IMG/VR virus record: IMGVR_UViG_3300023174_000042
Span: 1 to 64,000 of that record
Strand: one strand, 5' to 3'
Length of the DNA: 64,000 nt
The position numbers and the translations under genes are program-made. Below, one piece after another: positions 22,148-58,905 of this stretch. The notes under the pieces are model-generated. The model ran no database searches, was not told the origin of the DNA, and saw only the letters and a program-made list of their open reading frames with translations. Each line of letters opens with the position of its first letter. Within the stretch, counting starts at the first letter, position 1.

Positions 22148-22491
22148 TGAAGGTTAAAATTAATAATAATCTTTTCGATGTTAAATGTGTATTAACTTCC
22201 AAAGATACTCAAAAAGGTATGATGGGAAAAAAATTTGACAAATCTTTTGATGGTATGTTGTTTTTTATGAAAAACGAACCACATTCATTTTGGATGAAAA
22301 ATTGTGTAATTTCTTTGGATATAATTTTTATGGAAGACAATGTAATTTCTAAAATTCATCATAATTGTAAACCATGTTTTTCAGATACCTGTGAGCATTA
22401 TATGGGAGATGGCGATATGATTTTAGAATTACGTGGCGGTGATTGTAAAAAATATAAAATAGAAGAGGGTGATTTTGTTGAATTAATTTAA
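22147..22491 (+). CDS. DUF192 family protein (start reassigned to MKVKIN)
   Basis: KGMMG...GMLF...FWMKN...LDIIF...ILEL. Confidence 0.8.
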
Positions 22492-23637: not shown

Positions 23638-23869
23638 TGTTGATTTTTTGTTTGAGTTGTTCGATGTGGTGTTCGAGATACCATTTTGCTTTGGATAAAT
23701 CTTCCAATTCTTTGTTTTTTCCTTTTTTTCCTGCACGACTTATATATTTTATTGTATTTCCTAAACTAAACCCTAGATCCCAAGCATCGATCACTTTAAT
23801 GGCTTCGTAAGTGTTATCTTCTCCGCCATAATGTTGTGGGTGATTTACTTGTTCTTTATTGTTTTCCAT
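23621..23869 (-). CDS. DUF3310 (SaV-like) protein
   Basis: VNHPQHY...LGNTIKYISRAGKK...EDL.KA.WYL. Confidence 0.85.
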   Translation of the reverse strand: MENNKEQVNHPQHYGGEDNTYEAIKVIDAWDLGFSLGNTIKYISRAGKKGKNKELEDLSKAKWYLEHHIEQLKQKINNEQGN

Positions 23870-25079
23870 TTAAATCAAATTTAATTTCTTCAGTTGGTAT
23901 ATTTGATCCTTTCATGGTTTCTGAATCTATCAAATAATCTTCATCATTTTGATATTCATTTAATAGTTCATTACTTGTTAATGTTCCATATTTTTTATCT
24001 AAATCATTTACATCAACTTTATAATTAATTTTATACTTCATTTCATTAATTGCTTCAGCATTTTTTAATGAAAGAACAATTTGATTTATAATTTTATAAG
24101 GGTCTGCGTTTGATCCTGGTCTTCTATCTTCTAAATAACCTGTCCAATCTTCTGCCGTAGATTGTGGAACTCTAATCGATGCCCCTCTATCTGATACACC
24201 CCAACTAAACTTATCAATAGATTGTGTTTCAAATTGTCCTGTTAGTCTTAAATCGTTTTGTGATCCATAATTTTTAATATGTTCATAATGTCTTGATTCA
24301 AAACTTGAAAATAAAGATTTAAAGTATTCTTCTCTTTCAGTAAAACTTGTATTGTTTTTTTGGTTTCTCATTAAATCGGTTGAAAAGTTTGTGTGAAGTC
24401 CTGATCCGTTCCACTCTCCGTGTGTGATTGGTTTGGGGTGTAATTCAATGTGATATCCATATTTTTCTGAAGTTTTTAATAGAAAATATCTTGTCATCCA
24501 AAGATCATCTCCTGCTTGTAATTTACCTTGTGAAAATACTTGATACTCCCACTGACCTAAAGCAACTTCTGCGTTTATACCTGTAATGTTGATTCCGTAA
24601 TCTAAACACATATTCAAATGTTCATCAACAAAGTCACGACCAATTACGTTATGTCCAACCCCACAATAATATTCACCCTGACCTTTTAAAATATTTCTTT
24701 TATGACCTAAAATGTTTCCATTAACTTCTTCTCGAATAAAATATTCTTGTTCAAAACCAAACCAAAGATCTTCATATCCTTCAGCGACTTTAGCTCTTTT
24801 ATTAGATTCGTGTGGTGTTCCATCAGGATTTAAAACTTCGCATAAGACATAAATTGTTGATTGCATATTTCTAATATAATGTCTTACTGGTTTTAACATT
24901 CGATCTGAATTTCCTGTTTCTGCTTGCGATGTAGATGAACCATCGAAGTTCCAAGTTGGAAAATTGCCATCTAAAAAAGCGGTAGCTACTGAATCATAAT
25001 CAACAACTTTAACTTTGCTTCTTAAATTTGGTTCTGGTTTATATCCATCTAACCATACATACTCTAATATAATTTTCAT
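23856..25079 (-). CDS. glnII: glutamine synthetase type II with C-terminal extension
   Basis: EYVWLDG, FDGSST, GFEQEY, EVALGQWEYQ, WNGSGLHTNFST, RLTGQFET, RGASIRVP, YLEDRRP. Confidence 0.9.
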   Translation of the reverse strand: MKIILEYVWLDGYKPEPNLRSKVKVVDYDSVATAFLDGNFPTWNFDGSSTSQAETGNSDRMLKPVRHYIRNMQSTIYVLCEVLNPDGTPHESNKRAKVAEGYEDLWFGFEQEYFIREEVNGNILGHKRNILKGQGEYYCGVGHNVIGRDFVDEHLNMCLDYGINITGINAEVALGQWEYQVFSQGKLQAGDDLWMTRYFLLKTSEKYGYHIELHPKPITHGEWNGSGLHTNFSTDLMRNQKNNTSFTEREEYFKSLFSSFESRHYEHIKNYGSQNDLRLTGQFETQSIDKFSWGVSDRGASIRVPQSTAEDWTGYLEDRRPGSNADPYKIINQIVLSLKNAEAINEMKYKINYKVDVNDLDKKYGTLTSNELLNEYQNDEDYLIDSETMKGSNIPTEEIKFDLNGKQ

Positions 25080-27437: not shown

Positions 27438-28337
27438 ATGAACTCCCTTCACGAAGATATAAGAAGAATAAAAAAATTAATGAATCTACTTGAGGGCGAA
27501 CAACTCTATTTAGATTTAGATTTTGGCGAAAAGGACCAAAACAAAATTACAATTAATAGTCCTGAATTTAGTAAAGCGTTTAAAGAAAAAGTTTTTTTTA
27601 TATTAAAGGATATATACGGAAATACAAATTGGTCAAATCAAAAGGGTAAAGGAACAAGAGGTCGTGGTGGATTTGTAAATTTATACACTGTCTATGATTT
27701 AATGAAACAAAAAGGACTTGATGACTATGAAAAAGAAGGTGGTGATTGGTCAATAATAAATTATTTTGACACAAATCCACAAGTAAGAAAATATTTAGTA
27801 AATCTATGGAGAGCTGAGACTTCTAATGAATTGAAAAATGAAGAAAGTATTAAAGATTTTATTTTATGGATGTCAAGAAATAGAAATAAAATTTTCAAAG
27901 AAGGTCCTATACTTAAAAATTTGGTAGATTTGAATGCAACCTCTCTTTATAACGGAGAGCTAAATGAAAGAAAGGCTCACGAATATTTGTCAAAAGTTTT
28001 AAAAGAACTTCCTGATTGGGAACTTTTGAAAAGGTCTTTACCAGGTTCTACAAATGACAGAAAAGGTATTGACATCAAAATGAAAAATAAAAAAACAAAT
28101 AATGAGGCCGATTTTCAAGTAAAACCTTTATCAAACTTTGAAAAAACAAAAGATGGTTATTTGATTACTTCATATAATATAGTTGGTTTGAATGAAAAAC
28201 CTGTAGATTATTTTATATTTGCTTCTCACAATGTTGATGACGTATATATATTTAAAAATATAATAGGAAATTATGAAATTTTAAGCGATACAAAAGTTTT
28301 ATTTAAGGATAAACCTATAGAGTTTAAGTATTTATAA
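27438..28337 (+). CDS. leader-bearing protein with putative PD-(D/E)XK nuclease domain
   Basis: GELNE...DRKGID...FQVKP; TATTTATA at 27415-27422. Confidence 0.5.
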   Translation: MNSLHEDIRRIKKLMNLLEGEQLYLDLDFGEKDQNKITINSPEFSKAFKEKVFFILKDIYGNTNWSNQKGKGTRGRGGFVNLYTVYDLMKQKGLDDYEKEGGDWSIINYFDTNPQVRKYLVNLWRAETSNELKNEESIKDFILWMSRNRNKIFKEGPILKNLVDLNATSLYNGELNERKAHEYLSKVLKELPDWELLKRSLPGSTNDRKGIDIKMKNKKTNNEADFQVKPLSNFEKTKDGYLITSYNIVGLNEKPVDYFIFASHNVDDVYIFKNIIGNYEILSDTKVLFKDKPIEFKYL

Positions 28338-28340
28338 AAT

Positions 28341-29456
28341 ATGAGTTTAGAAAGAGCAAGACAATTAGTTGATTCATTTAATGATGGCGAATTTGAAGAT
28401 GAAATTGAGCCATATTTTAATGACCTTATTACTTTTTTTAAGTTTGTTAAAAAATATGGTCTTTTAGATGAAATTGATTTAGGTCAAATAGACCATCGTG
28501 ATTGGGATGATGAACTATTTAACTTTTTAGATGAAAATGGTGTTTTAACAAATCTTAGTTATGATGATTCACCTGAAGAACTTAAAAATTTATTACTTCT
28601 AAGAAATTTAGAAGACAACTACGAAGATACAGTTTATTTTATAATTAAAAATCTAATAACTGATGTTGAAATTAGAAATGGTGGTTTTTATCTAAGATTA
28701 AGAGATAGAGAAGAGTTAAGTGAATATTTTTGTAGTGGTAGTAGAAGAGGTGATAGTGACTCTAGACATGTTGCAAAACTAATTTTAAGTGATGAAGGTT
28801 TAGGTCACGATTGGTATTATGATTCTAGTATGACACCATACGATACAGTAGATGTTTTAAATGATTCTAATATTACACATCTTAAAGATGTTATTTATAA
28901 AAAAATAGGAAATCAAGAATTATCTTTAGAGGATTATGATTCGGACTTTTTTGAACACTTATCTGAAATACAAGAAACTGAAGGTTATTTTAGAATAAGA
29001 CCTGAAGATTTAAACGACCTATTAAAAGATAGTGACGCATCAAACGAACTTTTTAAAAATGATTTGGAAGATTTAGGTTCTGAGTTGAGAAGTGTCTATT
29101 ACAGCGCTGAAAATACAGCATACGAAGATGAGGTTTATGATTCCGTTTATAATGGTTTGGAGGAATACTTTGAGGGTCGTATTGATGAAGTTCCAAGAAA
29201 GGTCGGTGAAAAAACCAAATACGACCAATATATTAAAATCAGAGATTTTATTGGGAATATAACAACATTTTTAGAAAATAATAAGGTTGCAACATATTCT
29301 GACTCTTTTTTAGAATATTTTGGTGGATATACAACACTTATTAATAGTATGATTTATAATGGTGAATTAGAATGTATTGATATTAGAATACCTGATTATC
29401 CTGATTGGGACAGAACAAGAAGATACATTAACGAAATGTTTGAAGATTATATTTAA
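28341..29456 (+). CDS. acidic late-class hypothetical protein
   Basis: TATTTATA 4 nt before ATG; D/E-rich. Confidence 0.75.
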   Translation: MSLERARQLVDSFNDGEFEDEIEPYFNDLITFFKFVKKYGLLDEIDLGQIDHRDWDDELFNFLDENGVLTNLSYDDSPEELKNLLLLRNLEDNYEDTVYFIIKNLITDVEIRNGGFYLRLRDREELSEYFCSGSRRGDSDSRHVAKLILSDEGLGHDWYYDSSMTPYDTVDVLNDSNITHLKDVIYKKIGNQELSLEDYDSDFFEHLSEIQETEGYFRIRPEDLNDLLKDSDASNELFKNDLEDLGSELRSVYYSAENTAYEDEVYDSVYNGLEEYFEGRIDEVPRKVGEKTKYDQYIKIRDFIGNITTFLENNKVATYSDSFLEYFGGYTTLINSMIYNGELECIDIRIPDYPDWDRTRRYINEMFEDYI

Positions 29457-29505
29457 CTATTTATAGTTTCATTTAATTCTCATATTAATTATAAAAATTA
29501 AACAT

Positions 29506-30201
29506 ATGAGAAAATTAGAAAAAAACACAAGACGGTATTTTGTAAACCTATTTGCAGACTACATCCTGTCAAAATTCGACAAAAAAGAAAATACAATTAT
29601 TCAAATAACTGATTATGAATCTTTTGTTGTTGTAAATGGTCAAACAACAAGTAAAGAAATTATGGACCTTAATGAAATTAAATATGAGTTTTCAAATTGG
29701 TTTGATGATCTTTTAAGTTATTTAGGTATTAAAGAAATAAACATAATTGATGTAATAAAGTATGATCAAGAAATTTCTGATTTTGATAACAAATGGATTT
29801 TTGTTTCTAAAGAACTTTATACTATTGAACAAGAACCGATTTCTGAATTAAATTGTAGTTCGGAATTTCCTTACGGACATAGTTTAAGTTGCGGTAGATC
29901 AATTTTTTATTATACAAATTATATATTTAACCATATGTATTCCTTACTTGGCACTGATCAAACTTATTTTTATTACACCACCGAACAAAATGAAGATGAA
30001 GATTATAAAATTAAAGTTTCATGTAATTCCATAATTGACTCTAAAAAAATTAAAAGTTTGATTTTAGATTGTTTTGATATGGATTTGACAGAATTCAATA
30101 ACCGTCTTAGTGAATATTCATTTATGGATGATATTTTAGATCAAACATTAAATAAACCTTATTTAATTCAAGACAGGTTAGAAGATGTAATTTTAGTATA
30201 A
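29506..30201 (+). CDS. hypothetical protein, possibly a degenerate S-adenosylmethionine synthetase-like fold
   Basis: FADYIL...VVVNGQTTSK resembles MetK ISDAIL...V.GEITT; canonical MetK motifs absent. Confidence 0.35.
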   Translation: MRKLEKNTRRYFVNLFADYILSKFDKKENTIIQITDYESFVVVNGQTTSKEIMDLNEIKYEFSNWFDDLLSYLGIKEINIIDVIKYDQEISDFDNKWIFVSKELYTIEQEPISELNCSSEFPYGHSLSCGRSIFYYTNYIFNHMYSLLGTDQTYFYYTTEQNEDEDYKIKVSCNSIIDSKKIKSLILDCFDMDLTEFNNRLSEYSFMDDILDQTLNKPYLIQDRLEDVILV

Positions 30202-38132: not shown

Positions 38133-38984
38133 TTAATAGTTCATTATCAATATTTCCTCTCCCATGTTTTGTTTCTCACCTTTTTTAGCGGAAGCGGCCT
38201 TTGCAAACTCTTTTTTAACCCAAGTGTATTGGTCTTCGGGGAACCATTCGTGAAGAAGTTCAAAGTCATAATAGGATAATGAAAACTTACCTTTAACTTC
38301 GTGTAATACATTTGCCAATCTTTCATGGTCTTGACGATCAAAGTCGTGATTGGAGTAGTATGATCCTTCTCCCACAACATAATAGGGTGGGTCAACATAA
38401 AAATATGTATTTGGTGAATCATATTTTTCTATCACTTCCTGAAAGTCCATATTTTCAACAAAAGTAATAGATTCGAACATCTTTTGCCACTTTTCATTTT
38501 TTAATTTGTTTATGAAAGATGTGAATTTAGAATGGTATTTACCTTTTAAATCAATAAACTTTGATTTTGAAGGATTGGCTCCTGAAAAAACTTGTGTTAA
38601 AACATAGATATATTTTGCGGCAACTTCATAGTCATAAGCCTTTGGGCTGAAGTTTTCTTCGAATATTTCAGCCTGAAACCTTATAAATTGTTCTTCACAA
38701 ATTGGATCTGTTGGTCGTATATCTTTTTTTTGAACAACTAATTTTTCACACTCTTGAAGTAATTTTTGGTGATCTTTCAAACATTGATACATATTAAAGT
38801 TCAACTTGTTAAAGTCGTTATACACAACGGTTTTTAAATTTGGGTAATCTTCCAAGTTCATCTTAAAAAATGTCCAAAATTGACCACTAAATGGTTCTAC
38901 AAATGTCTCAATGTCTTTAGGGATGTTAGGTATTATTAATTGTGGGGCGATTTTTGATTTACCTCCGATATAACTTACGCACAT
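38133..38984 (-). CDS. Dam-like (D12 class) N6-adenine DNA methyltransferase
   Basis: YIGGKSK, VEPFSG, YND, YVDPPY. Confidence 0.85.
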   Translation of the reverse strand: MCVSYIGGKSKIAPQLIIPNIPKDIETFVEPFSGQFWTFFKMNLEDYPNLKTVVYNDFNKLNFNMYQCLKDHQKLLQECEKLVVQKKDIRPTDPICEEQFIRFQAEIFEENFSPKAYDYEVAAKYIYVLTQVFSGANPSKSKFIDLKGKYHSKFTSFINKLKNEKWQKMFESITFVENMDFQEVIEKYDSPNTYFYVDPPYYVVGEGSYYSNHDFDRQDHERLANVLHEVKGKFSLSYYDFELLHEWFPEDQYTWVKKEFAKAASAKKGEKQNMGEEILIMNY

Positions 38985-48929: not shown

Positions 48930-49730
48930 TTATAAATAATCGAATAATTCTGAAGAATCATTTCTAAGTCTTCGAAGGGCCTTTTCTTTGATTTGTCGAA
49001 CACGTTCTTTGGTTAGACCAAAATCAGATCCAATATCTTCTAAAGTTCTTGGAGTTCCAGTAAGTCCAAAATAATCACCAACAATCGACTTTTCACGATC
49101 ATCCAAAACATCCAAAAGTTTTAATAATTTGTCTTTAAGAATGTCTTTTGTATCAAATATCGCGTCCGGAAGTTCGGCATCCTTATTTGCGATCATATCC
49201 AACAAAGTATCACCATCTTCATTTATATTCATATCAAGATCAATCATAGATGGAAGAGAAGCAAACTTATCTTCAAGTTTTTTTCCGGTTTGCTCAACCT
49301 CTTTTTTTGCCTTATGAAGATCCTGAACCACATTAACGGGAAGACGAATTGTTCTTGAGTTATCATTTAACGATTGGATGATAGATTGTTTTACCCACCA
49401 TACCGCATATGATATAAATCTCAAATCTTTGTTCCAATCAAAGTTTTTAATTGCCTTCATTAAACCCAAATTTCCTTCAGCAATCAAGTCAGATAAATCA
49501 AGTCCCTGATTTTGATATTGTTTTGCCACCGTAATTACAAAACGAAGATTTCCTGTTAAAAGTTCTTCTTCAACTTTTTGTTTTTCTTTTAGTTCAATAT
49601 TATCAGACTTCATTTTTACCGCCAGTTCGCGTTCTCTTTCTGCGGTCATTACCTTAATTTTTCGAATATCTTTAAGGTAGTGATAAATTTCATCCTGATT
49701 AATTGGGGATCCTGCGCTTTTTTCTTTCAT
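48930..49730 (-). CDS. rpoD: RpoD-like sigma70 factor lacking region 1.1
   Basis: YLKDI (1.2), NLRFVITVAKQY, DLIAEGNLGL, RFISYAVWW, RTIRLP, region 4 TLEDIG..FGLTKERVRQI. Confidence 0.9.
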   Translation of the reverse strand: MKEKSAGSPINQDEIYHYLKDIRKIKVMTAERERELAVKMKSDNIELKEKQKVEEELLTGNLRFVITVAKQYQNQGLDLSDLIAEGNLGLMKAIKNFDWNKDLRFISYAVWWVKQSIIQSLNDNSRTIRLPVNVVQDLHKAKKEVEQTGKKLEDKFASLPSMIDLDMNINEDGDTLLDMIANKDAELPDAIFDTKDILKDKLLKLLDVLDDREKSIVGDYFGLTGTPRTLEDIGSDFGLTKERVRQIKEKALRRLRNDSSELFDYL

Positions 49731-49739
49731 ATATTATAT

Positions 49740-50276
49740 TTAAATTGTTTTTGAGTATTCTTCTAACTTTTGTTTTTCTAAATCAGTTAAGGAGTTCATA
49801 CCTTTTTCGATAATCTTATCAAGCAATTCGTCCAAAGTCATATTACAGGTCAAAGGTTGTTTGAAGTGGTTAATAATCTCTGTGTATTGTTCAAATGGAT
49901 TAACGAACTTTCGTCTTTTATTAAAACTTTCTTTTAACTGGTTTGTGTCATCAATATTATTGTTTTTTGGTGAAGTCTTTTTTAAGGTCATTAGATGATC
50001 TAAATTTTCTTGACCAAAGTTTGATGCGTAATCCTTAGACTTTTTTGTAACAAAATATTCAAAGTTTCCAACCTCCTCAGAGATAAACAAAATAACATCA
50101 CTAACGTCTTGAAATTCTCCTTTGTATCCGAAATGAAATACCGCATGTGTTGGTCCATACATAAATTTTACTTGACCGCTTGTCATGTGTTCGGCAATTT
50201 TTGTTCCAATTTCTTGTGTTTTTTTCTCGGCGTTTTTTACAGTTTTATCAAAGTAAGCAAAAAGTAAGTAATTCAT
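49740..50276 (-). CDS. hypothetical protein with C-terminal DUF6576-like motif
   Basis: LDELLDKIIEKGMNSLTDLEKQKL. Confidence 0.6.
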   Translation of the reverse strand: MNYLLFAYFDKTVKNAEKKTQEIGTKIAEHMTSGQVKFMYGPTHAVFHFGYKGEFQDVSDVILFISEEVGNFEYFVTKKSKDYASNFGQENLDHLMTLKKTSPKNNNIDDTNQLKESFNKRRKFVNPFEQYTEIINHFKQPLTCNMTLDELLDKIIEKGMNSLTDLEKQKLEEYSKTI

Positions 50277-50300
50277 ATGTTTATGTTTTTAATTGTTTCT

Positions 50301-50340
50301 ACAAATATAAGGATAAAATTGGGATTTGTTACAAGTTTTT
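50301..50340 (-). repeat. 40-bp direct repeat copy 1 (contains TATATTTG)
   Basis: 35/40 identical to 54012-54051. Confidence 0.85.
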
Positions 50341-50473
50341 TAAAAAAAATACACAAATGACTAATTGTGAATTTAATATATACTCCCAACTTCAACTTCC
50401 ATGATAGATTACAATGTAACTACCTTTACCCATTTCCCATGTCTTGAATGTTTGTGTGATATACAAATATGAA

Positions 50474-51928
50474 TTAACATAATTTATATATATTTTCATA
50501 CTTAAATACTTTAGTACGATATACAGTATTAATAGAATGAATTGTACGTATATAAAAATCCTTATCGAAATTTGTATCAGTATTTAAATAGAAATCCTCC
50601 GAGTCAATCATATTTATGTTAGAAATAACAATATTTTTACAAATATTTTCACAATCATTCACCTTATTAATTCTCGATAATGAATGATCTGTAAATATAT
50701 CACAACCTTTTTCTTCTTGTTGTATAAAAATATATTTTCTATTAACATTTTGTAATTTATCGGATTCAACTAATCCGTGATATGTTGAGTTTGACCCCGC
50801 ACACCAATCAAGAATAATATCACCATCGTTAGTGAATGATGTAATAATGTCCCTCATTAATATAATTGATTTAGGAGTGTTAAACGTTTTTTCACCGTAT
50901 AGTTTCTTCAACACATCAGTTGCCTGTGTATTTCCATATTCAGTTTTATCCATAATGGTCTTCATAGGTTGGAATGTTTTTACTTTTTCCATGTAGTTGA
51001 TAACACCGTTATTTTCATGTAAAACATCATATGGTTTATTTTTATTTAAAATAGTCTCATATGTTGGTACCCATCTACCCCACTTTTCTCCATATTTTGG
51101 AAATATTACTTTATGAGTTTTAGAGTATTTCTCCTCAATATTTTTAACATATTCACTAATTTTATTATTCATATCATCAGTGTATATTTTTGTTTTACTG
51201 TAGTCTTTACAGACATTATTAACAAACTTTTTTAGTAAAAGATATTCATTCTTACTTATTGTTGAGATTTTATTAGTTCCTTTTTCAATTAAGAATGGGT
51301 AAAATTGTCCTTGTCTATCGCAAACTAACTTTGCATTATATGCCAACAGACTTCTAGGTTTTACGTCTTTACCCTTGTCTTTACTTTCATTCAAAACACC
51401 TTCACCATATTCAAGTAAATTAATATTTTTAGCACAAACCACTAAATATTCATTAGTCGTTACTAAATCTTTTTTATTCCTTCTTCCACCACCACCTCTA
51501 TTTGACACAACAGTTGCAGTTGTTAATACATTTTTTTCACCAAAAACATCAACACATAAATTTTCCAAATTTCTTTTCTCATTGTGATCAATAGAAATAA
51601 CCATAACCCCATTATCGGAAAGTAGTTCTCTAACAATAATTAATCTAGGTAACATCCAAGAAATCCAATCTGAATGATAATTTAATGAATCGGTAGTATT
51701 AAATGTATCATTATAAATGAAATCCTCATTTCCGGTGTTATAAGGTACATCAGCATATGCTAATTTTATTTTTCCCTTATAAATGGAACTTAACCCTATT
51801 AATGATTGTAAATTATCACCTTTAACACCTAAAACATCAAATTCATCACTAAAATTAATGTTTGGAATTTTAACACCGTCTAAAATTTCTTTGTACTCGT
51901 TTGGTACTGTATTTTTATAAACTACCAT
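50474..51928 (-). CDS. mod: type III Mod-like DNA methyltransferase with variant motifs
   Basis: GDNL..L, YADVPYNTG (DPPY variant), SWMLPRL, ISID, FNTPKS, ILDWCAGSNST (DFFAGSGTT variant). Confidence 0.75.
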   Translation of the reverse strand: MVVYKNTVPNEYKEILDGVKIPNINFSDEFDVLGVKGDNLQSLIGLSSIYKGKIKLAYADVPYNTGNEDFIYNDTFNTTDSLNYHSDWISWMLPRLIIVRELLSDNGVMVISIDHNEKRNLENLCVDVFGEKNVLTTATVVSNRGGGGRRNKKDLVTTNEYLVVCAKNINLLEYGEGVLNESKDKGKDVKPRSLLAYNAKLVCDRQGQFYPFLIEKGTNKISTISKNEYLLLKKFVNNVCKDYSKTKIYTDDMNNKISEYVKNIEEKYSKTHKVIFPKYGEKWGRWVPTYETILNKNKPYDVLHENNGVINYMEKVKTFQPMKTIMDKTEYGNTQATDVLKKLYGEKTFNTPKSIILMRDIITSFTNDGDIILDWCAGSNSTYHGLVESDKLQNVNRKYIFIQQEEKGCDIFTDHSLSRINKVNDCENICKNIVISNINMIDSEDFYLNTDTNFDKDFYIRTIHSINTVYRTKVFKYENIYKLC

Positions 51929-53990
51929 ATCTTTGATTTATATTAATCCAACATTTATTATTAAGAAAACTACTTTCTTCGTATTCATCTTTCAACAAAG
52001 TTACTAAATTTTCTTGATTATTTATAACAACTAACATGTAATTATTAGGAACTCCTTCAGATTTAATAAATTTTTCCTTTTCTGAAATCATATTCCATGA
52101 AGTAATCTCCACAAACAATATTCTACCATTGTAACTAATTATATAGTCAGGCGAGTGGTTAACATCATATTCTGGAATATAAAATGAAATACCACCTTGA
52201 TTAGTTCTAGGATTTTGGAAAACCCAATCTGTTTTTTTTCGACTAATAATCTCATCAAAAAATTTAAGTTCACCCTTAGAATCAAAATAAACTTTATTGT
52301 CACAATCAGAATATAAAACTTTATCATAAAAAAGAGTATCTTCATCCATATATTTAACAATATTAGATTTATGACGAAGTATTTCTTTAGGAAAAATATA
52401 TTCTTTAGAACCACAAACTTTATAAGTTTTATTTATCTTTTTAAATTCGTCTAAAGTTTTTTTTACTAATTCACGTACTTTTAAATTTTTAGCAACATCA
52501 ACAACCAATTGTTTTTTATTAATACCTAATTTACTTAAGAAATAATTAAAAGACCCTTCAAGTATTGTGTTGTAATTATTCTCAAATCTATCAACAAAAT
52601 CAATCGCATCACATAAACTAATTTTATCAAAGAAATTTTTCTCAGAGTCTTTTTCCACATTATTAATTGTATCACCAGATAATAGATTATCAGTTATATA
52701 ATACATAGTTGTTAAAGTGTAAATTTGGTTTCTAATATTATTATAATTTATACCAAGTAATATTTTATCAATATTTTTAAAATTCTTATTAACATTAACC
52801 GTTTCAACGATAGGTTTAATAATTTTAACTTCGTCAATTTTTAAAGGGTTCTTTAATTCATAGACGGTTTTTTCTTGATTTAATATTTCTTTCATCATGT
52901 ATGATGGTAAGATAAAATCATCTTTAATAAAAAGAAAAACGGTATCCTGTACTTCATTTTCAACTTCAGATCCATTAAAAGTCCTTTTTGCTCTACCAAT
53001 AATTTGTATCTTTTGTTTTTCTGCCGATTTGGGTAAATTCCTCATTAACGCCAAGATACTAATTGATGGGCAATCAAACCCAATAGTTCCTGCGTATTTA
53101 GTTAAAATGATTTTATATTTATGTTTAGTGTTTTCACTAATCTCTTTAGTAAATGTTTCATACCCGTCAACATTATCTGACTTACCAACAACACTCAAGT
53201 CAAAAATTTCATCTTCTTTTATACCCCTTAATCTACATACATCATGTATAATTTTTTTCATTACTTTAAAATCTGAACCTTTTTCACATACAAATTGGGC
53301 CGTAACGGTATTACCATTGTAGAAAGGTTCAATCTCAAATAATTTATTTATTACGTCGTTAACAGTTTCATAATCATCAGTGTGACCTAATCGTAATAAC
53401 ATGATATTATTTTTAACACGTTTAGTTTTTTTAACTTCAACATCATCCATTACAAATATTTTATCATATTCAATATTTAAATCGGGTGTTGCGGAAAAAT
53501 GAAGTTCTAAGGTATTAATAGGTAATTTTTTAATTATTTTAACAGTCTCATTATTTTTATCGGTCACAAAAATACCTGATTCATCAATTGATAATATAAT
53601 ATTATAACCAATTTGACTATACTCATGTAAAAGAGTTAAAACACCTTTATCGTCACCATCAAGATGAAGTTTAGAACTTTCAGAATTAATAGAAGCGTGA
53701 GTATCAACAATACTAATTACATTCTGTAAAGGTTTTACATCTCTAAATTCACTAAACGTATATGATGTCACACCTAATTTACTTTGATTATGTTTTATAC
53801 GTAATGACACATTTTTAGATGGTGATAAAGTAATAAACAAAATTTTACCACCATTAATATATTTGGGTAAGTAACTAATTAAAGTTGTTTTACCACAACC
53901 AGTTCCCCCTTGGAATAATACTCTTATGGGTGATCCGTTGTTATCATTAACAAATTTAAGAAATTCTTTAGGTGTTTTAGTTAAATTCAT
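51915..53990 (-). CDS. res: type III Res-like SF2 helicase-endonuclease
   Basis: GGTGCGKT, IDESG, FSATP, GFDCPSI, QIIGRAKR; C-terminal SPDY...FVEIT. Confidence 0.7.
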   Translation of the reverse strand: MNLTKTPKEFLKFVNDNNGSPIRVLFQGGTGCGKTTLISYLPKYINGGKILFITLSPSKNVSLRIKHNQSKLGVTSYTFSEFRDVKPLQNVISIVDTHASINSESSKLHLDGDDKGVLTLLHEYSQIGYNIILSIDESGIFVTDKNNETVKIIKKLPINTLELHFSATPDLNIEYDKIFVMDDVEVKKTKRVKNNIMLLRLGHTDDYETVNDVINKLFEIEPFYNGNTVTAQFVCEKGSDFKVMKKIIHDVCRLRGIKEDEIFDLSVVGKSDNVDGYETFTKEISENTKHKYKIILTKYAGTIGFDCPSISILALMRNLPKSAEKQKIQIIGRAKRTFNGSEVENEVQDTVFLFIKDDFILPSYMMKEILNQEKTVYELKNPLKIDEVKIIKPIVETVNVNKNFKNIDKILLGINYNNIRNQIYTLTTMYYITDNLLSGDTINNVEKDSEKNFFDKISLCDAIDFVDRFENNYNTILEGSFNYFLSKLGINKKQLVVDVAKNLKVRELVKKTLDEFKKINKTYKVCGSKEYIFPKEILRHKSNIVKYMDEDTLFYDKVLYSDCDNKVYFDSKGELKFFDEIISRKKTDWVFQNPRTNQGGISFYIPEYDVNHSPDYIISYNGRILFVEITSWNMISEKEKFIKSEGVPNNYMLVVINNQENLVTLLKDEYEESSFLNNKCWININQRYGSL

Positions 53991-54011
53991 GGTATTACGT
54001 TTTTTATTAAA

Positions 54012-54051
54012 ACAAATATACGAATAAAGTTGAGATTTGTTTCAAGTTTTT
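54012..54051 (-). repeat. 40-bp direct repeat copy 2 (contains TATATTTG)
   Basis: 35/40 identical to 50301-50340. Confidence 0.85.
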
Positions 54052-56422
54052 ACAAAACTTTTGACAAATTATTTTCTTTTTTAATTTTCACCACATGGTC
54101 ACCCCATGAGGACACAGCACTATTATGCGATATAACAAACACTTTTTCAAAATAATCTTTAATCTTCACAAAGAATTCATAAACCATATCTAAGTTCTCA
54201 GGAGATATTTTACCAAAGACTTCGTCTAATACGACGAGATTCGGAGTTGGTAAAGTACATATCTTTGTTAATACCGCTCTTAATGCTAATGATGATAAAG
54301 TCTTCTCATATCCACTTCCTGATGTCATTAGTTTTTCAACACCTGTTCCATTATCAATCATCATAAACTCAACTTCATTTTTGTCGTTAATTCTTATTTC
54401 CATTTTGAAATAACATGAATCTTCCATAAGTCTTTGAAGTTCCGTATTGATTAAAGGCATCATAGTTTTCATAATCATTTTTGAAATCCCATTTTTACCA
54501 TAAAGTTCCAAATAGATCTTAAAGATTTTTTCTTTCTCTTCTTCTTCTTTGATTTTAACAATCATTTTTTTGTTATTATCAATCTTTTCATCAAGTGATT
54601 TAATTGATGTTTCATTTGTTAAAATTGAGTTTGTAATAGTTCTATTTTGAATTTCTAAATCTTCTAATCTAAGGTCAGCCTTTATCAACTGTGCGTCTAT
54701 TTTATGATTTTCAGAAATTTTATCTTGTATTTCTTCCCAACGTTTAATCTTATCGTTTAATGAACCAATCTTTAAATCACAACTTTCAACAGATATTTCA
54801 TATTTTTCTTTAACCAGTTTGTTTTTTTCGTATTCATCAAATTCTTTTTTGAGTCTCACAAATGATTGTTCTTTTTTGAAAAAATCATTCATAAGTGTTG
54901 TTTTTGTGTTTTTTTTCACAATAAGTCCATTTAACTCTGCAATTTTTGAATTTGTGATTGCTGCGTTCATTAACTCAATTCCACAATGTTCGCATTTGAT
55001 TCCACCCTCAACTGAAGATTTTAATTTGTTGATTGATTCTATTTCAGTGTCAATTTGAATAATTTCTTTATAAACATTGTTATATTGTTCTTTAATTTCA
55101 TCATGTTTATCCTCATGGTAAAACTCAGATGGTTCAACGACTTTGATTTCAGAAATTTTTGTTAAATAACCTGACTTTTCTTTTTCAATTTCTTTTATTT
55201 CATCTTTGGTTTTATCAGGATTTAATAAACTTAATTCTTGATCAATGTTTGTATGTTTTCTTTTTAACATATCATCACGATATGTTTTTCCTTTCGAAAT
55301 TGCTTGATTTACGTCTGATAAATTTTTCTTTTCTTCTTCAATTTTATTTTTTAATTCTATAATTGAAGTTTGGTATGTTTCAATATCAGTTTTTAATTGT
55401 TCTGAAGAATATAGATTTGATATCTTTTGTTTTGAAAACTCTAAATAGATTTCTTTTGCGACTTCTTCTTTTCTTTTCAAAAACTCAAGTCCCATAAATC
55501 TTGATAACACCTGACCTCTTGCTGTTGGTTTTGATTCCAATAAATCTTCAAGGTTTGATCCTGTTGTAAGGATCGTCATTAAAAAGTCTTCCTTTGTTCC
55601 AATTGAGTTTTTAATGAAGGCTTCTGTTTCTCTTCTTTGTTCTCCCGTAAAATTTAATAAAGAACCATCTGACAACTTTTTAAAAAAGTCCAGTTCGGTT
55701 TTGACATTCCATTCACCTTTTTTGGACATCTTTCTTTCGATGTTTCTAACAATAACATAATCTTCACCATCAATTGTAATTTCACCTTTAACATGAACGT
55801 TATCTTTGTTTGAAAATCGGTTAAATATTTCTTCTGCTTTTGTTGTTTTTGTTGTTTCGTTAAAAAACAAAAACATTAAAAGATCCACCGTTAATACAGT
55901 TTTTCCACCAAAATTGGGAGGATCAGATTCAACCACCACAATACCATTTAAACTATCAAAGTTTAATCTTTGGTTTTCACCGTAGGATAAAAAGTTTGAA
56001 AATTCAATATTTCTGATATACCATTTTTTAAATTGTGATGAAGTTTCTTCATCTCCACTCATCTTATTTTCGACCATTTTGTTGATGTTTAATACATCAT
56101 CAGTTTTGTCTTCATGTCCTTTTGATTTAAGGTAATTTGAAATAAGATCAAGTTGGTATTGTGTGTCAGAGATATTCACCGACACATCAATACTTTGTAT
56201 AGTTTCACTTTCAACATTTTTTGCCTTTGTTAAAACATTAACGTTTGTTGTGTTATACTTTTTAGAAAAATAATGCTTGACACTTTTGATTTTATCTTGT
56301 GTAAAGTTTTCTGGTACGTCTTCCCAAACAACTTGTATAGTGGGATTTTCAAATTTTGAAAAGTCCAAATCTTTTATCATAATATCGTAATTGAATAATT
56401 TCGGTGGATTGAATAAATCCAT
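54050..56422 (-). CDS. sbcC: SbcC/Rad50/T4 gp46-like ATPase
   Basis: FSNFLSYG, NFGGKT, Zn hook CEHCG, signature SGSGYE, LDEVF, VISH. Confidence 0.9.
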   Translation of the reverse strand: MDLFNPPKLFNYDIMIKDLDFSKFENPTIQVVWEDVPENFTQDKIKSVKHYFSKKYNTTNVNVLTKAKNVESETIQSIDVSVNISDTQYQLDLISNYLKSKGHEDKTDDVLNINKMVENKMSGDEETSSQFKKWYIRNIEFSNFLSYGENQRLNFDSLNGIVVVESDPPNFGGKTVLTVDLLMFLFFNETTKTTKAEEIFNRFSNKDNVHVKGEITIDGEDYVIVRNIERKMSKKGEWNVKTELDFFKKLSDGSLLNFTGEQRRETEAFIKNSIGTKEDFLMTILTTGSNLEDLLESKPTARGQVLSRFMGLEFLKRKEEVAKEIYLEFSKQKISNLYSSEQLKTDIETYQTSIIELKNKIEEEKKNLSDVNQAISKGKTYRDDMLKRKHTNIDQELSLLNPDKTKDEIKEIEKEKSGYLTKISEIKVVEPSEFYHEDKHDEIKEQYNNVYKEIIQIDTEIESINKLKSSVEGGIKCEHCGIELMNAAITNSKIAELNGLIVKKNTKTTLMNDFFKKEQSFVRLKKEFDEYEKNKLVKEKYEISVESCDLKIGSLNDKIKRWEEIQDKISENHKIDAQLIKADLRLEDLEIQNRTITNSILTNETSIKSLDEKIDNNKKMIVKIKEEEEKEKIFKIYLELYGKNGISKMIMKTMMPLINTELQRLMEDSCYFKMEIRINDKNEVEFMMIDNGTGVEKLMTSGSGYEKTLSSLALRAVLTKICTLPTPNLVVLDEVFGKISPENLDMVYEFFVKIKDYFEKVFVISHNSAVSSWGDHVVKIKKENNLSKVL

Positions 56423-57273: not shown

Positions 57274-58169
57274 AATCTATTATTTAAATTTGATCCCCTT
57301 AAAAAGTAACCCTGATTTTGGTTACCATTCAAAAGTTCTCGGTTTATTTTTTCTAATTCTTTTATTTGTTCGTTCTTTTGTTGTAGTTCATTTCTTAGAT
57401 TTTGTAAAGTCTCTTGTAACATTTTTAACTTATTATTTGTTACAGGATCGTCTAACTTTTGTCTAAGTTCATCTAACTCATTATTCTTTTTTAACATTTC
57501 ATTTTGGAAAAAAATTTCCATTTCTTCTGTTTTAGTGAAAGATTCTTGTCTGATATTGTCAATTTCTGCGGTCTTAATCGAAATTTCTCCGTTTAAGTGT
57601 TCTATTTTTGACAACAATTCATTCAACTGTTCGGAATTTCTTAACAGTTCAATTTCCAACTTGGAGTTTTTTTCGCCAAGTTCGTTTATTTGACTGTCAT
57701 CGGTGGTATAGATTATTTTCTCAACCAATCTATCAACCGGAACTTCTTTAATAACTTCCTTAACAACTACCCTGTCAACAGGTATTTCTTTTGTAACCTC
57801 AACAATCTTTTCTATCTCCTTTACAACATTAAAAGGAACCTCAACTATCTTTTCTACCTCTTTTATTATTTCTACAGGAACCTCAATGATCTTTTCAACT
57901 TCTTTAATTACCTCAACCTCTTTGATGACTTCAACAGGAACTTCCACACGTTTTTCACGGATTACCTCTTTTATTAAGTCTTTTTCACCTTCATTATCCG
58001 TTTTTCCCAAAAACCCATATTTTTTAATATCGAATCCTTGTTTGAAACATAGATATATGAAATTATCGATATCCTTAATTTCTTGTGATTCACAAAATGC
58101 AGACACTGCCTGCATCATTTCTTTACTAAATATTTTGGAGTTTTTCGAATCCATTTTCAATATCTTCAA
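57270..58169 (-). CDS. soluble protein with VEVP/KEVEK repeats and C-terminal coiled coil
   Basis: Same repeat vocabulary as 47292..48623. Confidence 0.8.
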   Translation of the reverse strand: MKILKMDSKNSKIFSKEMMQAVSAFCESQEIKDIDNFIYLCFKQGFDIKKYGFLGKTDNEGEKDLIKEVIREKRVEVPVEVIKEVEVIKEVEKIIEVPVEIIKEVEKIVEVPFNVVKEIEKIVEVTKEIPVDRVVVKEVIKEVPVDRLVEKIIYTTDDSQINELGEKNSKLEIELLRNSEQLNELLSKIEHLNGEISIKTAEIDNIRQESFTKTEEMEIFFQNEMLKKNNELDELRQKLDDPVTNNKLKMLQETLQNLRNELQQKNEQIKELEKINRELLNGNQNQGYFLRGSNLNNRL

Positions 58170-58905
58170 ATGATTTTATGGAGAACTTCAAAAATGGTTT
58201 TGGGTTTGGTAAATCAACGTAAGAATATTCTTTTGTTTCAACATCATAAATACCATAACCATGTTTTCCAATACTCTCTCCAATGTTTTGTTGAATTGGT
58301 GATCCGATCATATAACCTTTACCAGTCTTGAATTTGAATTCTTGTCTTTTGTGAATATCTCCACATAATACGGTTTCAAGTCCATCAAACTTTTCAACAT
58401 CGTATGCCTCTTCACCAAAGTCAAATCCAAGATCTGTTTTCATTCCTTGAATTGGTCCGTGAAACAATCCAATTCTTTTACCTTTTGATTCTGTAATGTC
58501 AGGTGGAATATTTCCTTGATATTGTGAAAACACACACCAACTGATGTTTTCATCTTCATAAACACCTCTGTCTTTGTAATAATAAATGTTTTTACTATTC
58601 AAAGAACTAATGATTGGTGATAAAGCATCCATTCTTTCGGTGTTATTTACCAAGAAGTCGTGGTTTCCAGGTATAATAATTGTCTTTGCAACAAACGAAC
58701 ATTCGGTCAATAACCATCTAACCATTTCAATAAGTTCAGGTGTCATTTGGTTTTTAGAATGAACTAAATCTCCCGTAAAAACAATACGATCAGGTTCTAA
58801 CTCTATCCATTGTTCAATTGCCGTTTTCAAAATAGATTTATACAAATCGTGGTCTTTAAAAAGACGGATGTGTAGGTCAGAAAAATGTATTAGTTTTTTA
58901 ATCAT
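58126..58905 (-). CDS. sbcD: SbcD/Mre11/T4 gp47-like metallophosphoesterase nuclease
   Basis: HFSDLH, TGD, PGNHD, FHG, GDIH. Confidence 0.9.
   Translation of the reverse strand: MIKKLIHFSDLHIRLFKDHDLYKSILKTAIEQWIELEPDRIVFTGDLVHSKNQMTPELIEMVRWLLTECSFVAKTIIIPGNHDFLVNNTERMDALSPIISSLNSKNIYYYKDRGVYEDENISWCVFSQYQGNIPPDITESKGKRIGLFHGPIQGMKTDLGFDFGEEAYDVEKFDGLETVLCGDIHKRQEFKFKTGKGYMIGSPIQQNIGESIGKHGYGIYDVETKEYSYVDLPNPKPFLKFSIKSFEDIENGFEKLQNI

What the first reader, a model, noticed from the sequence alone, without database searches (positions are those of the whole stretch)
50474..53990. Type III R-M-like pair in a phage, in res-mod order with altered catalytic motifs
Seen: overlapping (14 nt) helicase-nuclease and methylase genes. 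Mod has DVPY for DPPY and DWCAGSNS for DFFAGSGT; Res has DESG at Walker B and a C-terminal PD...E.T. Known: type III systems are usually mod-res and are bacterial defences. Inference: a phage-borne weapon against host or co-infecting DNA, a decoy or dominant-negative of host type III R-M, or a new variant system.
Basis: partly seen in the sequence, partly recalled or inferred. Interest (0 to 1): 0.62.

Follow-up and report, generated by a model that had tools for sequence, protein, structure and literature searches.

The report
Divergent phage type III restriction-modification cassette
A freshwater jumbo phage carries a compact, strongly diverged relative of type III restriction-modification enzymes, with the cutter gene first and rewired catalytic motifs; it is an optional cassette in a gene-swapping hotspot, so it is a new variant of a known system rather than a new kind of system.

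Summary

- **Mod:** a clear type III Mod relative.
- **Res:** an SF2 ATPase plus a PD-(D/E)xK-fold domain. It links to type III Res only through a profile search.
- **Conservation:** the pair defines a small clade, about 8 lineages in lake and freshwater metagenomes. All seven lineages whose junction resembles the window's have res before mod with the 14-nt overlap; the eighth (L009) has res followed 4 nt later by a Mod-like ORF. Every clade sequence covering a given motif carries DVPY, GSNST or E-x-T.
- **Rewired nuclease site:** two family-wide lysines are lost and two basic residues appear nearby, while the acidic residues stay.
- **Selection:** dN/dS is 0.19 for Res and 0.07 for Mod, so this is not decay. 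However, one relative has a nonsense codon in res and another lacks its 5' end.
- **Location:** the cassette fills a hypervariable slot between SbcC and the next backbone gene. In 78 related phages with a measurable slot, it is empty in 30 and otherwise mostly holds methyltransferases.

Best reading: a working, phage-adapted type III variant. Whether it actually cuts DNA is open.

The parts
54012..54057 (-). Copy 1 of a 46-bp promoter-like direct repeat. It ends 21 nt before the res ATG, and its 5' end overlaps the last codons of SbcC. It contains TATATTTG, which fits the Bacteroidota-type -7 box TAnnTTTG (consensus cited from my own knowledge).
   Evidence: There are only two copies in the 272-kb genome at up to 9 of 36 mismatches, and 0 are expected in shuffles.
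51915..53990 (-). res-like gene, 691 aa. Residues 1-372 form an SF2 two-RecA ATPase core, a middle beta/alpha and helical region follows, and residues about 560-691 form a PD-(D/E)xK-fold domain.
53883..53906 (-). Res motif I (Walker A), GTGCGKTT, residues 29-36.
53574..53585 (-). Res motif II, DESG, residues 136-139. Clade relatives have DEAG, DEAH or DESH.
51918..52313 (-). Res C-terminal nuclease-fold domain. E574, N593, D615, E628 and K643 are kept. T630 replaces the family-wide Lys and Q592 replaces a family-wide Lys/Arg. R595 and K638 are basic residues specific to the clade.
51915..51928 (-). 14-nt overlap of the res stop and the mod start (translational coupling, inferred).
   Evidence: The same overlap is seen in 11 further loci.
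50474..51928 (-). mod-like gene, 484 aa. It is a beta-class amino-methyltransferase of the type III Mod family with short N- and C-terminal regions.
51740..51751 (-). Mod motif IV variant DVPY, residues 60-63.
50783..50809 (-). Mod motif I variant DWCAGSNST, residues 374-382.
50301..50346 (-). Copy 2 of the 46-bp repeat (39/46 identical to copy 1). It ends 24 nt before the ATG of the next backbone gene (o178, 49740..50276).
54050..56422 (-). SbcC/gp46-like backbone gene, the upstream border of the hotspot (context only).
49740..50276 (-). o178, a conserved backbone gene of unknown function, the downstream border of the hotspot (context only).

Best explanation
This is a compact, highly diverged type III restriction-modification cassette that has adapted to life in a family of freshwater jumbo phages.

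**What is shown.** Mod is a type III-family methyltransferase. Res is an SF2 ATPase fused to a PD-(D/E)xK-fold domain and is distantly homologous to the short (700-800 aa) type III Res proteins. The two genes are inherited together, always res first, with a 14-nt overlap in every lineage but one. Both are under purifying selection. The cassette is optional cargo in one hypervariable slot of the phage backbone.

**What is inferred.**
- The pair is transcribed from its own promoter-like element and translated in a coupled way.
- The proteins assemble like EcoP15I, as a Mod dimer plus Res.
- Mod recognises a short asymmetric site and methylates the phage's own DNA.
- Res uses ATP as a switch to slide along DNA and cuts DNA that lacks the mark: the host chromosome or a competing phage.
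- The nuclease site is rewired rather than dead. The canonical Lys of E-x-K and a second conserved Lys are gone, but new basic residues (K638 in the following helix, R595 three residues after the lost K592) sit nearby, and all metal-binding acidic residues are kept.
- Res-first order suits a lytic phage, which has no reason to protect host DNA before the nuclease appears.
For: **Mod.** PADLOC MTase_III 9e-62; PDB 6k0w Mod 2.9e-33 and EcoP15I Mod 6e-27; Pfam N6_N4_Mtase 5e-27.

**Res homology.**
- A clade profile finds about 100 proteins of 700-800 aa. Sampled ones pass the Pfam ResIII cutoff and match PADLOC REase_III at 1e-10 to 5e-19.
- P0049 aligns over profile positions 19-642, and P0049 and P0014 sit in mod->res pairs.
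- Clade members P0007 and P0008 pass the ResIII cutoff themselves.
- SF2 motifs I, II, III, V and VI are kept.

**Res fold.**
- The full-length AF2 model has pLDDT 83.9. Residues 1-372 match SF2 cores, including EcoP15I Res at Z 21.3, rmsd 3.9 over 332 aligned residues, 17% identity.
- The C-terminal model has pLDDT 84.2. Its best matches are all PD-(D/E)xK nucleases, led by Hje 1ob8 at Z 8.0, rmsd 3.1 over 103 residues, followed by Hjc, D212, Bax1 and TnsA.

**Active-site columns.**
- E574 and D615 are invariant in all 48 sequences, and position 628 is always Asp or Glu.
- Position 630 is K in 39/39 outgroup sequences and T in 9/9 clade sequences.
- Position 638 is K in 9/9 clade and 3/39 outgroup sequences.
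- Position 592 is K/R in 36/39 outgroup sequences and Q/H in the clade.
- Position 595 is R in 9/9 clade sequences and D/E in 28/39 outgroup sequences.
- A lysine that has moved into the second core helix has a precedent (Pa4535, PMC3424549).

**Linkage and selection.**
- Eleven further loci have res->mod with the 14-nt overlap.
- Res and Mod identities to the window's proteins fall together: 62/65, 48/62, 43/55 and 38/52 %.
- dN/dS against a 92%-identical relative is 0.19 for Res and 0.07 for Mod.
- Identical pieces, including the junction and codon 283, occur in three runs of an independent study.

**Complex prediction, Mod + Res 1-510.** Weak support.
- ipSAE was 0.52 against a best control of 0.00. 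The runs agreed in at least 95% of contacts, and the partner's pLDDT was at least 69.
- The mark was reached by 58 of 80 solved complexes and 2 of 110 mismatched pairs. At 0.60 or under, it was reached by only 7 of those 80 and by both mismatches that passed.

**Cargo status.** In 78 related phage loci the SbcC|o178 gap is 7-110 nt in 30 and 0.5-4.1 kb in 48; none carries this Res.

**Analogue.** Chloroviruses use virus-encoded R-M enzymes to degrade host DNA (PMC7019647).
Against: - The window's own Res matches no PADLOC or NCBIfam model, and Pfam ResIII only at E 0.08. The link to type III Res is transitive.
- K918A at the equivalent lysine is used as the nuclease-dead mutant of EcoPI (PMC2709564), so E-x-T may mean no cleavage.
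- I could not inspect model coordinates, so the nearness of K638 and R595 to the active site is untested.
- Mod's motif IV (DVPY), motif I (GSN for GSG) and a clade-specific GGGGRRN loop could alter or abolish methyl transfer.
- res carries a TAG at codon 283 in L016 and lacks its first ~80 codons, including Walker A, in L004. Mod is intact in both, so Res can be lost.
- The commonest cargo of the same hotspot in relatives is an orphan methyltransferase (30 loci).
- No expression, methylation or cleavage data exist, and no RNA run holds the stretch.
Confidence: 0.5

Rival explanations
1. Methylation-centred module with a non-cutting Res. Mod methylates phage DNA to escape host restriction. Res has lost nuclease activity (E-x-T) and survives as an ATP-driven DNA-sliding or loading partner that helps Mod find or process sites, or as a stabilising subunit.
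For: - The catalytic Lys is replaced in all clade members, and K918A is the nuclease-dead form of EcoPI (PMC2709564).
- Mod is under tighter constraint than Res, with dN/dS 0.07 against 0.19, and is always the more conserved of the two.
- res is broken or truncated in two relatives while mod stays intact.
- The same hotspot holds orphan methyltransferases in 30 of 78 related phages.
Against: - All three acidic residues, N593 and K643 of the nuclease site stay invariant across lineages at 38-62% identity. Two new basic residues are fixed beside the lost ones. A dead site would be expected to drift.
- The phage already has two canonical orphan methyltransferases, so it does not need a helicase for plain protection.
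Confidence: 0.25
2. The Mod-like protein has changed chemistry or target. It might act on another base, use another donor, or only bind DNA. The pair would then be a DNA-modification or DNA-sensing device that is no longer an R-M system in the classical sense.
For: - Three clade-specific changes lie in conserved methyltransferase motifs or beside them: DPPY to DVPY, GSG to GSN, and a GGGGRRN loop where relatives have GG..D.
- The nearest outgroup pair (L013) also has a degenerate motif I, GGTMMT.
Against: - The D, second P and Y of motif IV are kept.
- The last Gly of motif I also varies in ordinary type III Mods (GSATT in P0133 and P0144).
- The rest of the methyltransferase core aligns with EcoP15I Mod.
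Confidence: 0.1
3. Decoy or dominant-negative. The phage subunits poison or titrate the host's own type III enzyme.
For: Only the general likeness to type III subunits and the altered catalytic motifs.
Against: - Identity to canonical Mods is only 26-31%, and Res is too far away to be detected directly. This makes mixed complexes unlikely.
- Both genes co-evolve with each other.
- The Mod lacks most of the N- and C-terminal domains that in EcoP15I mediate dimerisation and Res contact (PMC4490356).
- The host is unknown.
Confidence: 0.04
4. A dying insertion: a horizontally acquired R-M remnant that is decaying.
For: A nonsense codon in res in L016 and a 5'-truncated res in L004. Motifs depart from the canonical forms.
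Against: - Open full-length frames occur in the window and in five other lineages.
- The variant motifs are invariant.
- dN/dS is 0.19 and 0.07.
- The sequence is identical in an independent study.
- The region downstream of the L016 stop still shows dN/dS 0.18, so that stop is recent, rare or an assembly error.
Confidence: 0.03

Closest known systems
EcoP1I / EcoP15I (prototype type III R-M; EcoP1I is carried by phage P1)
   Same: - A two-gene system: a beta-class Mod with the recognition domain between motif blocks IV-VIII and X-I-III, and a Res made of an SF2 ATPase plus a C-terminal PD-(D/E)xK-fold domain.
- Mod is homologous at 6e-27, and the Res core superposes at Z 21.3.
- It is also phage-borne.
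   Different: - Gene order is res->mod with a 14-nt overlap, instead of mod->res.
- Mod is 484 aa against 644 aa, with the NTD and CTD largely missing.
- Res is 691 aa against about 970 aa (EcoP15I Res length from my own knowledge). Given that size, the Q-arm and Pin insertions are presumably absent; this was not tested here.
- The motifs are E-x-T for E-x-K, DVPY for DPPY and GSN for GSG.
- The carrier is an apparently virulent jumbo phage: no tyrosine integrase was found, which is weak evidence.
Short type III Res/Mod pairs of metagenomic bacteria (for example P0049 with its Mod in L006, and P0014 in L014)
   Same: - Res is 700-800 aa with the same domain order. The C-terminal domains align column by column, including E574, N593, D615, E/D628 and K643.
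- They match PADLOC REase_III.
   Different: - These pairs are mod->res, with Mods of 650-760 aa and canonical DPPY, GSGT and (E/D)-x-K.
- Identity to the window's Res is only 15-20%.
L013 pair (P0013 plus its downstream Mod-like ORF), the nearest outgroup
   Same: - It is res->mod in order.
- Its Mod is 30% identical and collinear through the recognition domain.
- Its motif I is also degenerate, GGTMMT.
   Different: - There is a 20-nt gap instead of the overlap.
- It keeps DPPY in Mod and D-x-K in Res.
Chlorovirus R-M systems; T4 hyperplastic regions with PeSL cassettes
   Same: - Chlorovirus enzymes are virus-encoded nuclease and methyltransferase pairs used against host DNA (PMC7019647).
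- In T4-type phages, accessory genes flanked by repeated promoter-type motifs are swapped in hotspots (PMC2839356, PMC4122927). This resembles the 46-bp repeat flanking the cassette and the variable SbcC|o178 slot.
   Different: - Chlorovirus enzymes are type II-like and are packaged in virions.
- PeSL-type exchange is only an analogy here. In the 11 relatives that carry the motif before o178, it is present as a single copy.

Membership tests
Type III restriction-modification system | Mod subunit: a beta-class N6/N4 amino-methyltransferase homologous to type III Mods, with the recognition domain between motifs IV-VIII and X-I-III | tested here: met
   PADLOC MTase_III 9.1e-62. PDB 6k0w 2.9e-33 and 4zcf_A 6e-27. 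DVPY at residues 60-63 and motif I at 374-382, with about 300 residues between them.
Type III restriction-modification system | Mod catalytic motif IV (D/N/S)-P-P-(Y/F/W) and motif I F-x-G-x-G | tested here: not met
   DVPY and C-A-G-S-N, invariant in 9-10 clade Mods. D, the second P and Y are kept, and the last Gly also varies (GSATT) in ordinary Mods. Activity therefore cannot be judged.
Type III restriction-modification system | Res subunit: an SF2 helicase-like ATPase with motifs I, II, III, V and VI | tested here: met
   Motifs are aligned. The fold matches at Z 20-24 to SF2 cores, including EcoP15I Res at Z 21.3. Pfam ResIII is over the cutoff in clade members P0007 (27.8 bits) and P0008 (36.1 bits), but reaches only 13.3 bits in the window's own protein.
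Type III restriction-modification system | Res matches curated type III Res models directly | tested here: not met
   PADLOC gives 0 families for P0001 and NCBIfam gives 0. The link goes through the clade profile to proteins that match REase_III.
Type III restriction-modification system | C-terminal PD-(D/E)xK nuclease with catalytic D, E/D and K | tested here: not met
   The fold is present, and D615 and E628 are kept. The Lys is Thr in all clade members, against K in 39/39 outgroup sequences. A relocated Lys (K638) is possible but untested.
Type III restriction-modification system | Adjacent mod and res genes, usually in mod->res order | tested here: not met
   The genes are adjacent, but the order is res->mod in the window and in all 12 other clade loci (11 with the 14-nt overlap, L009 with a 4-nt gap), and in the nearest outgroup. 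Three canonical relatives and phage phi1605 are mod->res. Order is typical of the family rather than strictly defining.
Type III restriction-modification system | Res and Mod form one complex (Mod2Res1 or Mod2Res2) | tested here: inconclusive
   Complex prediction gave weak support: 0.52 against a best control of 0.00. Co-variation of the two proteins and the conserved overlap agree with this.
Type III restriction-modification system | ATP-dependent cleavage that needs two inversely oriented unmethylated sites; methylation of one strand only | not testable with these tools
   This needs biochemistry or a methylome.
Orphan phage DNA methyltransferase (anti-restriction) | A methyltransferase without a linked nuclease or helicase partner | tested here: not met
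   Mod is always linked to Res wherever the upstream DNA is visible. The window holds true orphan methyltransferases at 22483..23337 and 38133..38984.
Other helicase-methylase defence systems (DISARM, BREX, type I, type ISP) | Matches to their signature proteins | tested here: not met
   PADLOC lists no such family for Res and only MTase_III, MTase_II or orphan models for Mod.

The most novel reading that the evidence does not exclude
The clade could be a distinct, phage-specific R-M subtype derived from type III. Its features would be res-first coupled expression for immediate attack on unmodified host or rival DNA, a nuclease site in which both conserved lysines have moved (K630 to K638, K592 to R595), and a Mod whose remodelled pocket (DVPY, GSN, GGGGRRN loop) gives a different target base, donor or mode of recognition. 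If so, it would be an offensive R-M machine with new enzymology rather than a borrowed bacterial defence.
Probability: 0.2. Interest if true: 0.7.

Novelty: new variant of a known kind. Interest (0 to 1): 0.5.

Why it matters
- **Type III diversity.** It widens the known range of type III R-M: a minimal Res and Mod, inverted and translationally coupled gene order, and an active site with relocated basic residues. This is a natural experiment on which residues the nuclease and methyltransferase really need.
- **Virulent-type jumbo phages.** It shows that jumbo phages of freshwater communities that look virulent carry complete R-M-like cassettes, not only orphan methyltransferases. These sit in a defined hotspot where DNA-modification genes are swapped.
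- **Phage ecology.** If the enzyme cuts, it is a candidate tool for host-DNA destruction or for excluding rival phages.
- **New reagents.** If it methylates, it offers a new specificity.

Tried and rejected
- **Direct searches for Res found nothing.** This covers megablast and tblastn against 50,697 phage records, PHROGs (only weak P-loop hits to clamp-loader families), PADLOC and NCBIfam, and a PDB sequence search with the 4-sequence profile (best E 0.074, not meaningful).
- **Pattern scans for Res relatives found none.** This covers IMG/VR and JGI metagenome contigs.
- **The weak Pfam hit to a 5-hmdU DNA kinase is treated as chance.** It was E 0.027 at residues 599-647. That stretch is the core of the nuclease fold.
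- **Whole-protein fold search does not single out type III Res.** EcoP15I Res is tied with many other SF2 enzymes.
- **Promoter and terminator scans were uninformative.**
  - The sigma-70 and terminator scan gave 33 hits against 33.9 expected.
  - The Bacteroidota -7 box is only mildly enriched genome-wide, 478 against 424 +/- 17. The promoter reading is therefore an inference.
- **The TAG in L016 was not read through with another genetic code,** because nothing in these genomes shows recoding.
- **Model coordinates could not be inspected,** so distances around the active site were not measured.
Full report
**1.

The window is the first 64 kb of a 272,576-bp IMG/VR virus record (93% complete, about 28% G+C).

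Two ORFs lie on the minus strand:
- 51915..53990, 691 aa, called Res below.
- 50474..51928, 484 aa, called Mod below.

They overlap by 14 nt. The coding strand reads ...TATGGTAGTTTATAA..., with the mod ATG inside the last res codons.

- Mod: DVPY at residues 60-63 and DWCAGSNS at 374-381.
- Res: GTGCGKTT, DESG, SATP and QIIGRAKR, plus the C-terminal PD...E-I-T.

**2. What the two proteins are**

*Mod* is plainly a type III Mod relative.
- PADLOC MTase_III scores 9e-62.
- Pfam N6_N4_Mtase scores 5e-27.
- The best solved relatives are a Mod (6k0w, 2.9e-33) and EcoP15I Mod (4zcf, 6e-27).
- Phage P1 Mod is 28% identical.
- The alignment to EcoP15I Mod covers its residues 96-473. The N-terminal domain and most of the C-terminal domain are therefore missing or replaced (domain limits from PMC4490356).

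*Res* matches nothing directly.
- It matches no PADLOC or NCBIfam model.
- Pfam ResIII scores only E 0.08.
- tblastn finds no hit in 50,697 phage records.

The word search found three relatives. A profile of these, run against 1.84 billion representatives, gave two tiers.
- The first tier is a tiny close clade: 7 representatives at E < 1e-30.
- The second tier is about 100 proteins of 700-800 aa.

The second-tier proteins I sampled behave like type III Res.
- They pass the Pfam ResIII cutoff.
- They match PADLOC REase_III at 1e-10 to 5e-19.
- Two also match the TnsA-like nuclease domain at the C-terminus.
- Where context was visible, they sit in canonical mod->res pairs (L006, L014, L015).
- P0049 aligns with the clade profile across positions 19-642.

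Res is therefore a distant offshoot of the short type III Res proteins.

*The folds agree.*
- The full-length model has pLDDT 83.9. Residues 1-372 form an SF2 two-RecA core, matching EcoP15I Res at Z 21.3 (rmsd 3.9, 332 residues, 17% identity). That score is tied with many other SF2 enzymes.
- The C-terminal domain, folded alone, has pLDDT 84.2. It matches only PD-(D/E)xK nucleases: Hje at Z 8.0 (rmsd 3.1, 103 residues), then Hjc, D212, I-Ssp6803I, Bax1, TnsA and VRR-NUC.
- These Z values are middling, but the hits are uniform and agree with the sequence alignment.

**3. The variants are clade characters, not damage**

*Loci.* I recovered these further loci with the pair: L016, L004, L002/3, L005, L007/8, L017/18, L019-22 and L009. 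Together with the window they make about eight lineages. The nearest outgroup is L013.
- Every clade locus has res before mod.
- All but L009 have the 14-nt overlap. L009 has a 4-nt gap.
- L013 is also res->mod, with a 20-nt gap.

*Mod motifs.*
- DVPY is invariant in all clade Mods that cover it.
- C-A-G-S-N-S-T-Y is invariant in 10 clade Mods.
- A GGGGRRN loop is also clade-specific.
- Canonical relatives have DPPY, and GSGT or GSATT.

*Res ATPase motifs.* All SF2 motifs are kept. Motif II is DE[SA][GH].

*Res nuclease domain.* The changes are coordinated.

| Position | Outgroup (39 sequences) | Clade (9 sequences) |
|---|---|---|
| E574, D615 | invariant | invariant |
| 628 | always D or E | E in 9/9 |
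| N593 | N in 37/39 | N in 9/9 |
| K643 | K in 37/39 | K in 8/9 |
| 630 | K in 39/39 | T in 9/9 (also T in L019) |
| 592 | K/R in 36/39 | Q or H |
| 595 | D/E in 28/39 | R in 9/9 |
| 638 | K in 3/39 | K in 9/9 |

Two basic residues have in effect shifted, by +8 and +3 positions. The metal-binding carboxylates are retained.

A lysine that has moved into the second core helix is a documented variant of this fold (Pa4535, motif PD-EXX-K; PMC3424549). On the other hand, K918A at the canonical position is the standard nuclease-dead EcoPI (PMC2709564).

I could not read the model coordinates. Whether K638 and R595 reach the active site therefore remains an inference.

**4. Selection and integrity**

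L016 is 91.7% identical to the window in nucleotides, with no gaps.
- dN/dS against it is 0.19 for Res (446 codons) and 0.07 for Mod (422 codons).
- Res and Mod identities to the window's proteins fall together across lineages, and Mod is always the better conserved: 62/65, 48/62, 43/55 and 38/52 %.

There are two blemishes.
- L016 has GAG->TAG at res codon 283.
- In L004, unrelated sequence replaces the first ~80 res codons, including Walker A.
- Mod is intact in both.

In the window's own phage the gene is sound. Contigs from three runs of an independent freshwater study match with no differences. They cover the res/mod junction and codon 283.

So the pair is maintained by selection, but Res can be lost. 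This is as often seen for R-M nucleases.

**5. Genomic setting**

*Neighbouring genes.* The neighbours on the same strand are backbone genes.
- SbcD lies at 58126..58905.
- SbcC lies at 54050..56422.
- A conserved 178-aa gene (o178) lies at 49740..50276.
- A sigma factor lies at 48930..49730.

*The hotspot.* Eighty related IMG/VR loci were found through SbcC at 64-94% identity. They keep the order SbcD-o299-o117-o105-SbcC-[gap]-o178-sigma-o443-o197. The gap could be measured in 78 of them.
- It is 7-110 nt in 30 loci.
- It is 0.5-4.1 kb in 48 loci.
- It is 3,773 nt in the window.
- None of the 80 carries this Res.

The gap cargo elsewhere is varied:
- An orphan N6_N4 methyltransferase of 314 aa, in 30 loci.
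- A different ResIII-helicase (761 aa) plus an Eco57I-type methylase (404 aa), also helicase first, in L053.
- An Eco57I/N6 methylase in L071.
- A TnpB in L065-67.
- Several proteins of unknown function.

*Cassette position in other lineages.*
- In L007/8 the res-mod cassette lies in the same slot, behind SbcC and one extra gene.
- In L002 it follows a glutamine-synthetase-like gene. That gene is 27 kb away in the window.
- In L020 it follows a denV-like gene.

The cassette is thus mobile accessory cargo, in a hotspot that mainly collects DNA-modification genes.

*The flanking repeat.* In the window the cassette is flanked by a 46-bp imperfect direct repeat (39/46 identical).
- One copy ends 21 nt before the res ATG. 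The other ends 24 nt before the o178 ATG.
- These are the only two copies in the whole genome.
- Eleven relatives have the element once, in front of o178.
- It contains TATATTTG, which fits the Bacteroidota -7 box TAnnTTTG (my own knowledge of that consensus).
- Upstream of res, most other clade loci and the outgroup L013 have similar boxes.
- The box is only mildly enriched genome-wide.

I read the element as the o178 promoter duplicated in front of res. This resembles the promoter-type repeats that mediate cassette shuffling in T4-type phages (PMC2839356, PMC4122927), but that is an analogy.

No tyrosine integrase was found. This is weak evidence for a virulent lifestyle.

**6. How it most likely works**

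*Shown:*
- The homologies and folds.
- The linkage of the two genes.
- Purifying selection.
- The cargo status of the cassette.

*Inferred:*
- The genes are co-transcribed and translationally coupled.
- Mod dimerises and binds Res. Complex prediction gives weak support.
  - The score was 0.52 against a best control of 0.00. The runs agreed in at least 95% of contacts, and the partner's pLDDT was at least 69.
  - The mark was reached by 58 of 80 solved complexes and 2 of 110 mismatches. At 0.60 or under it was reached by only 7 of those 80 and by both mismatches that passed.
- Mod methylates the phage genome at a short asymmetric site.
- Res, switched by ATP, slides along DNA and cleaves unmodified DNA of the host or of rival phages.

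Res-first order makes sense for a virus that need not protect its host. Virus-encoded R-M enzymes that destroy host DNA are known from chloroviruses (PMC7019647).

The main rival is that Res no longer cuts and the module is essentially a self-protection methylase with an ATPase helper. These points favour it:
- The lost lysine.
- The tighter constraint on Mod.
- The broken res copies in two relatives.
- The orphan methylases that fill the same slot in relatives.

I put about 0.5 on a working R-M and 0.25 on the non-cutting version. The rest is split among changed Mod chemistry, decoy and decay.

**7. Comparison and novelty**

It works like, and descends from, type III R-M. It fails several strict membership features:
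- No direct match of Res to curated type III Res models.
- E-x-T in place of E-x-K.
- DVPY in place of DPPY.
- The gene order.

I therefore file it as a new variant of a known kind, not a plain member.

Being phage-borne is not new in itself. P1 and P7 carry EcoP1I-type systems and phi1605 carries mod->res.

These features are new:
- The compact architecture.
- The conserved res-first 14-nt overlap.
- The relocated basic residues of the nuclease site.
- The residence in a modification-gene hotspot of freshwater jumbo phages.

Noticed in passing
window 50277..54049; loci L023-L102 just after the SbcC match: The junction between SbcC and the 178-aa backbone gene is a hypervariable hotspot in a large family of freshwater jumbo phages. 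It is empty (7-110 nt) in 30 of 78 loci and holds 0.5-4.1 kb of varied cargo in 48. The cargo includes an orphan N6_N4 methyltransferase (30 loci), an Eco57I-type methylase, TnpB and several proteins of unknown function.
   Followed up: partly
L053:11461-14978: A related phage carries a different helicase-first pair in the same hotspot: a 761-aa ResIII/SNF2-like protein followed by a 404-aa Eco57I-type methylase. It may be a split type ISP- or IIG-like system.
   Followed up: no
window 54012..54057 and 50301..50346: A 46-bp direct repeat (39/46 identical) flanks the cassette and is unique to these two places in the 272-kb genome. Each copy sits 21-24 nt before a start codon. It is probably a duplicated promoter.
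   Followed up: partly
window 22483..23337 and 38133..38984: There are two more DNA methyltransferase genes with canonical motifs. One is beta-class ([13 protein letters not shown]). The other is Dam-like D12 class (DPPY).
   Followed up: partly
window 23856..25079; L002:3199-4254: A glutamine-synthetase-like gene (Pfam Gln-synt_N/C in the L002 homologue, 58% identical) is encoded by the phage. In L002 it sits directly upstream of res.
   Followed up: no
L016:1-2595 (equivalent to window 53256..50662): A 91.7%-identical relative has GAG->TAG at res codon 283 while mod is intact. It could be a recent nonsense mutation, a population variant or an assembly error.
   Followed up: partly
L004:1-230: In this relative the res frame starts only at the equivalent of residue ~83. 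Unrelated sequence lies upstream, so Walker A is missing. The cause could be truncation, an insertion splitting the gene, or a chimeric contig.
   Followed up: partly
window 48930..49730: A phage-encoded RNA polymerase sigma factor (PHROG 351, 2.4e-54) lies two genes downstream of mod. It is conserved in 78 of 80 related loci.
   Followed up: no
L002:8-1321; intergenic regions upstream of res in clade loci: There are two hints that the hosts are Bacteroidota. A CHU_C (T9SS-type) domain protein sits on the related contig L002. TAnnTTTG-type boxes lie before res in most clade loci.
   Followed up: partly
window 13697..17734 and 27438..30201: A 1345-aa ORF lies in a stretch of raised G+C (0.34-0.36, against about 0.28 elsewhere). 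A block of three plus-strand genes has reversed GC skew (+0.23) in an otherwise minus-strand region.
   Followed up: no
L007:4867-5355; L020:244-732: A denV-like pyrimidine-dimer glycosylase gene (Pfam Pyr_excise) lies directly after mod in one lineage and directly before res in another. This shows local shuffling around the cassette.
   Followed up: no
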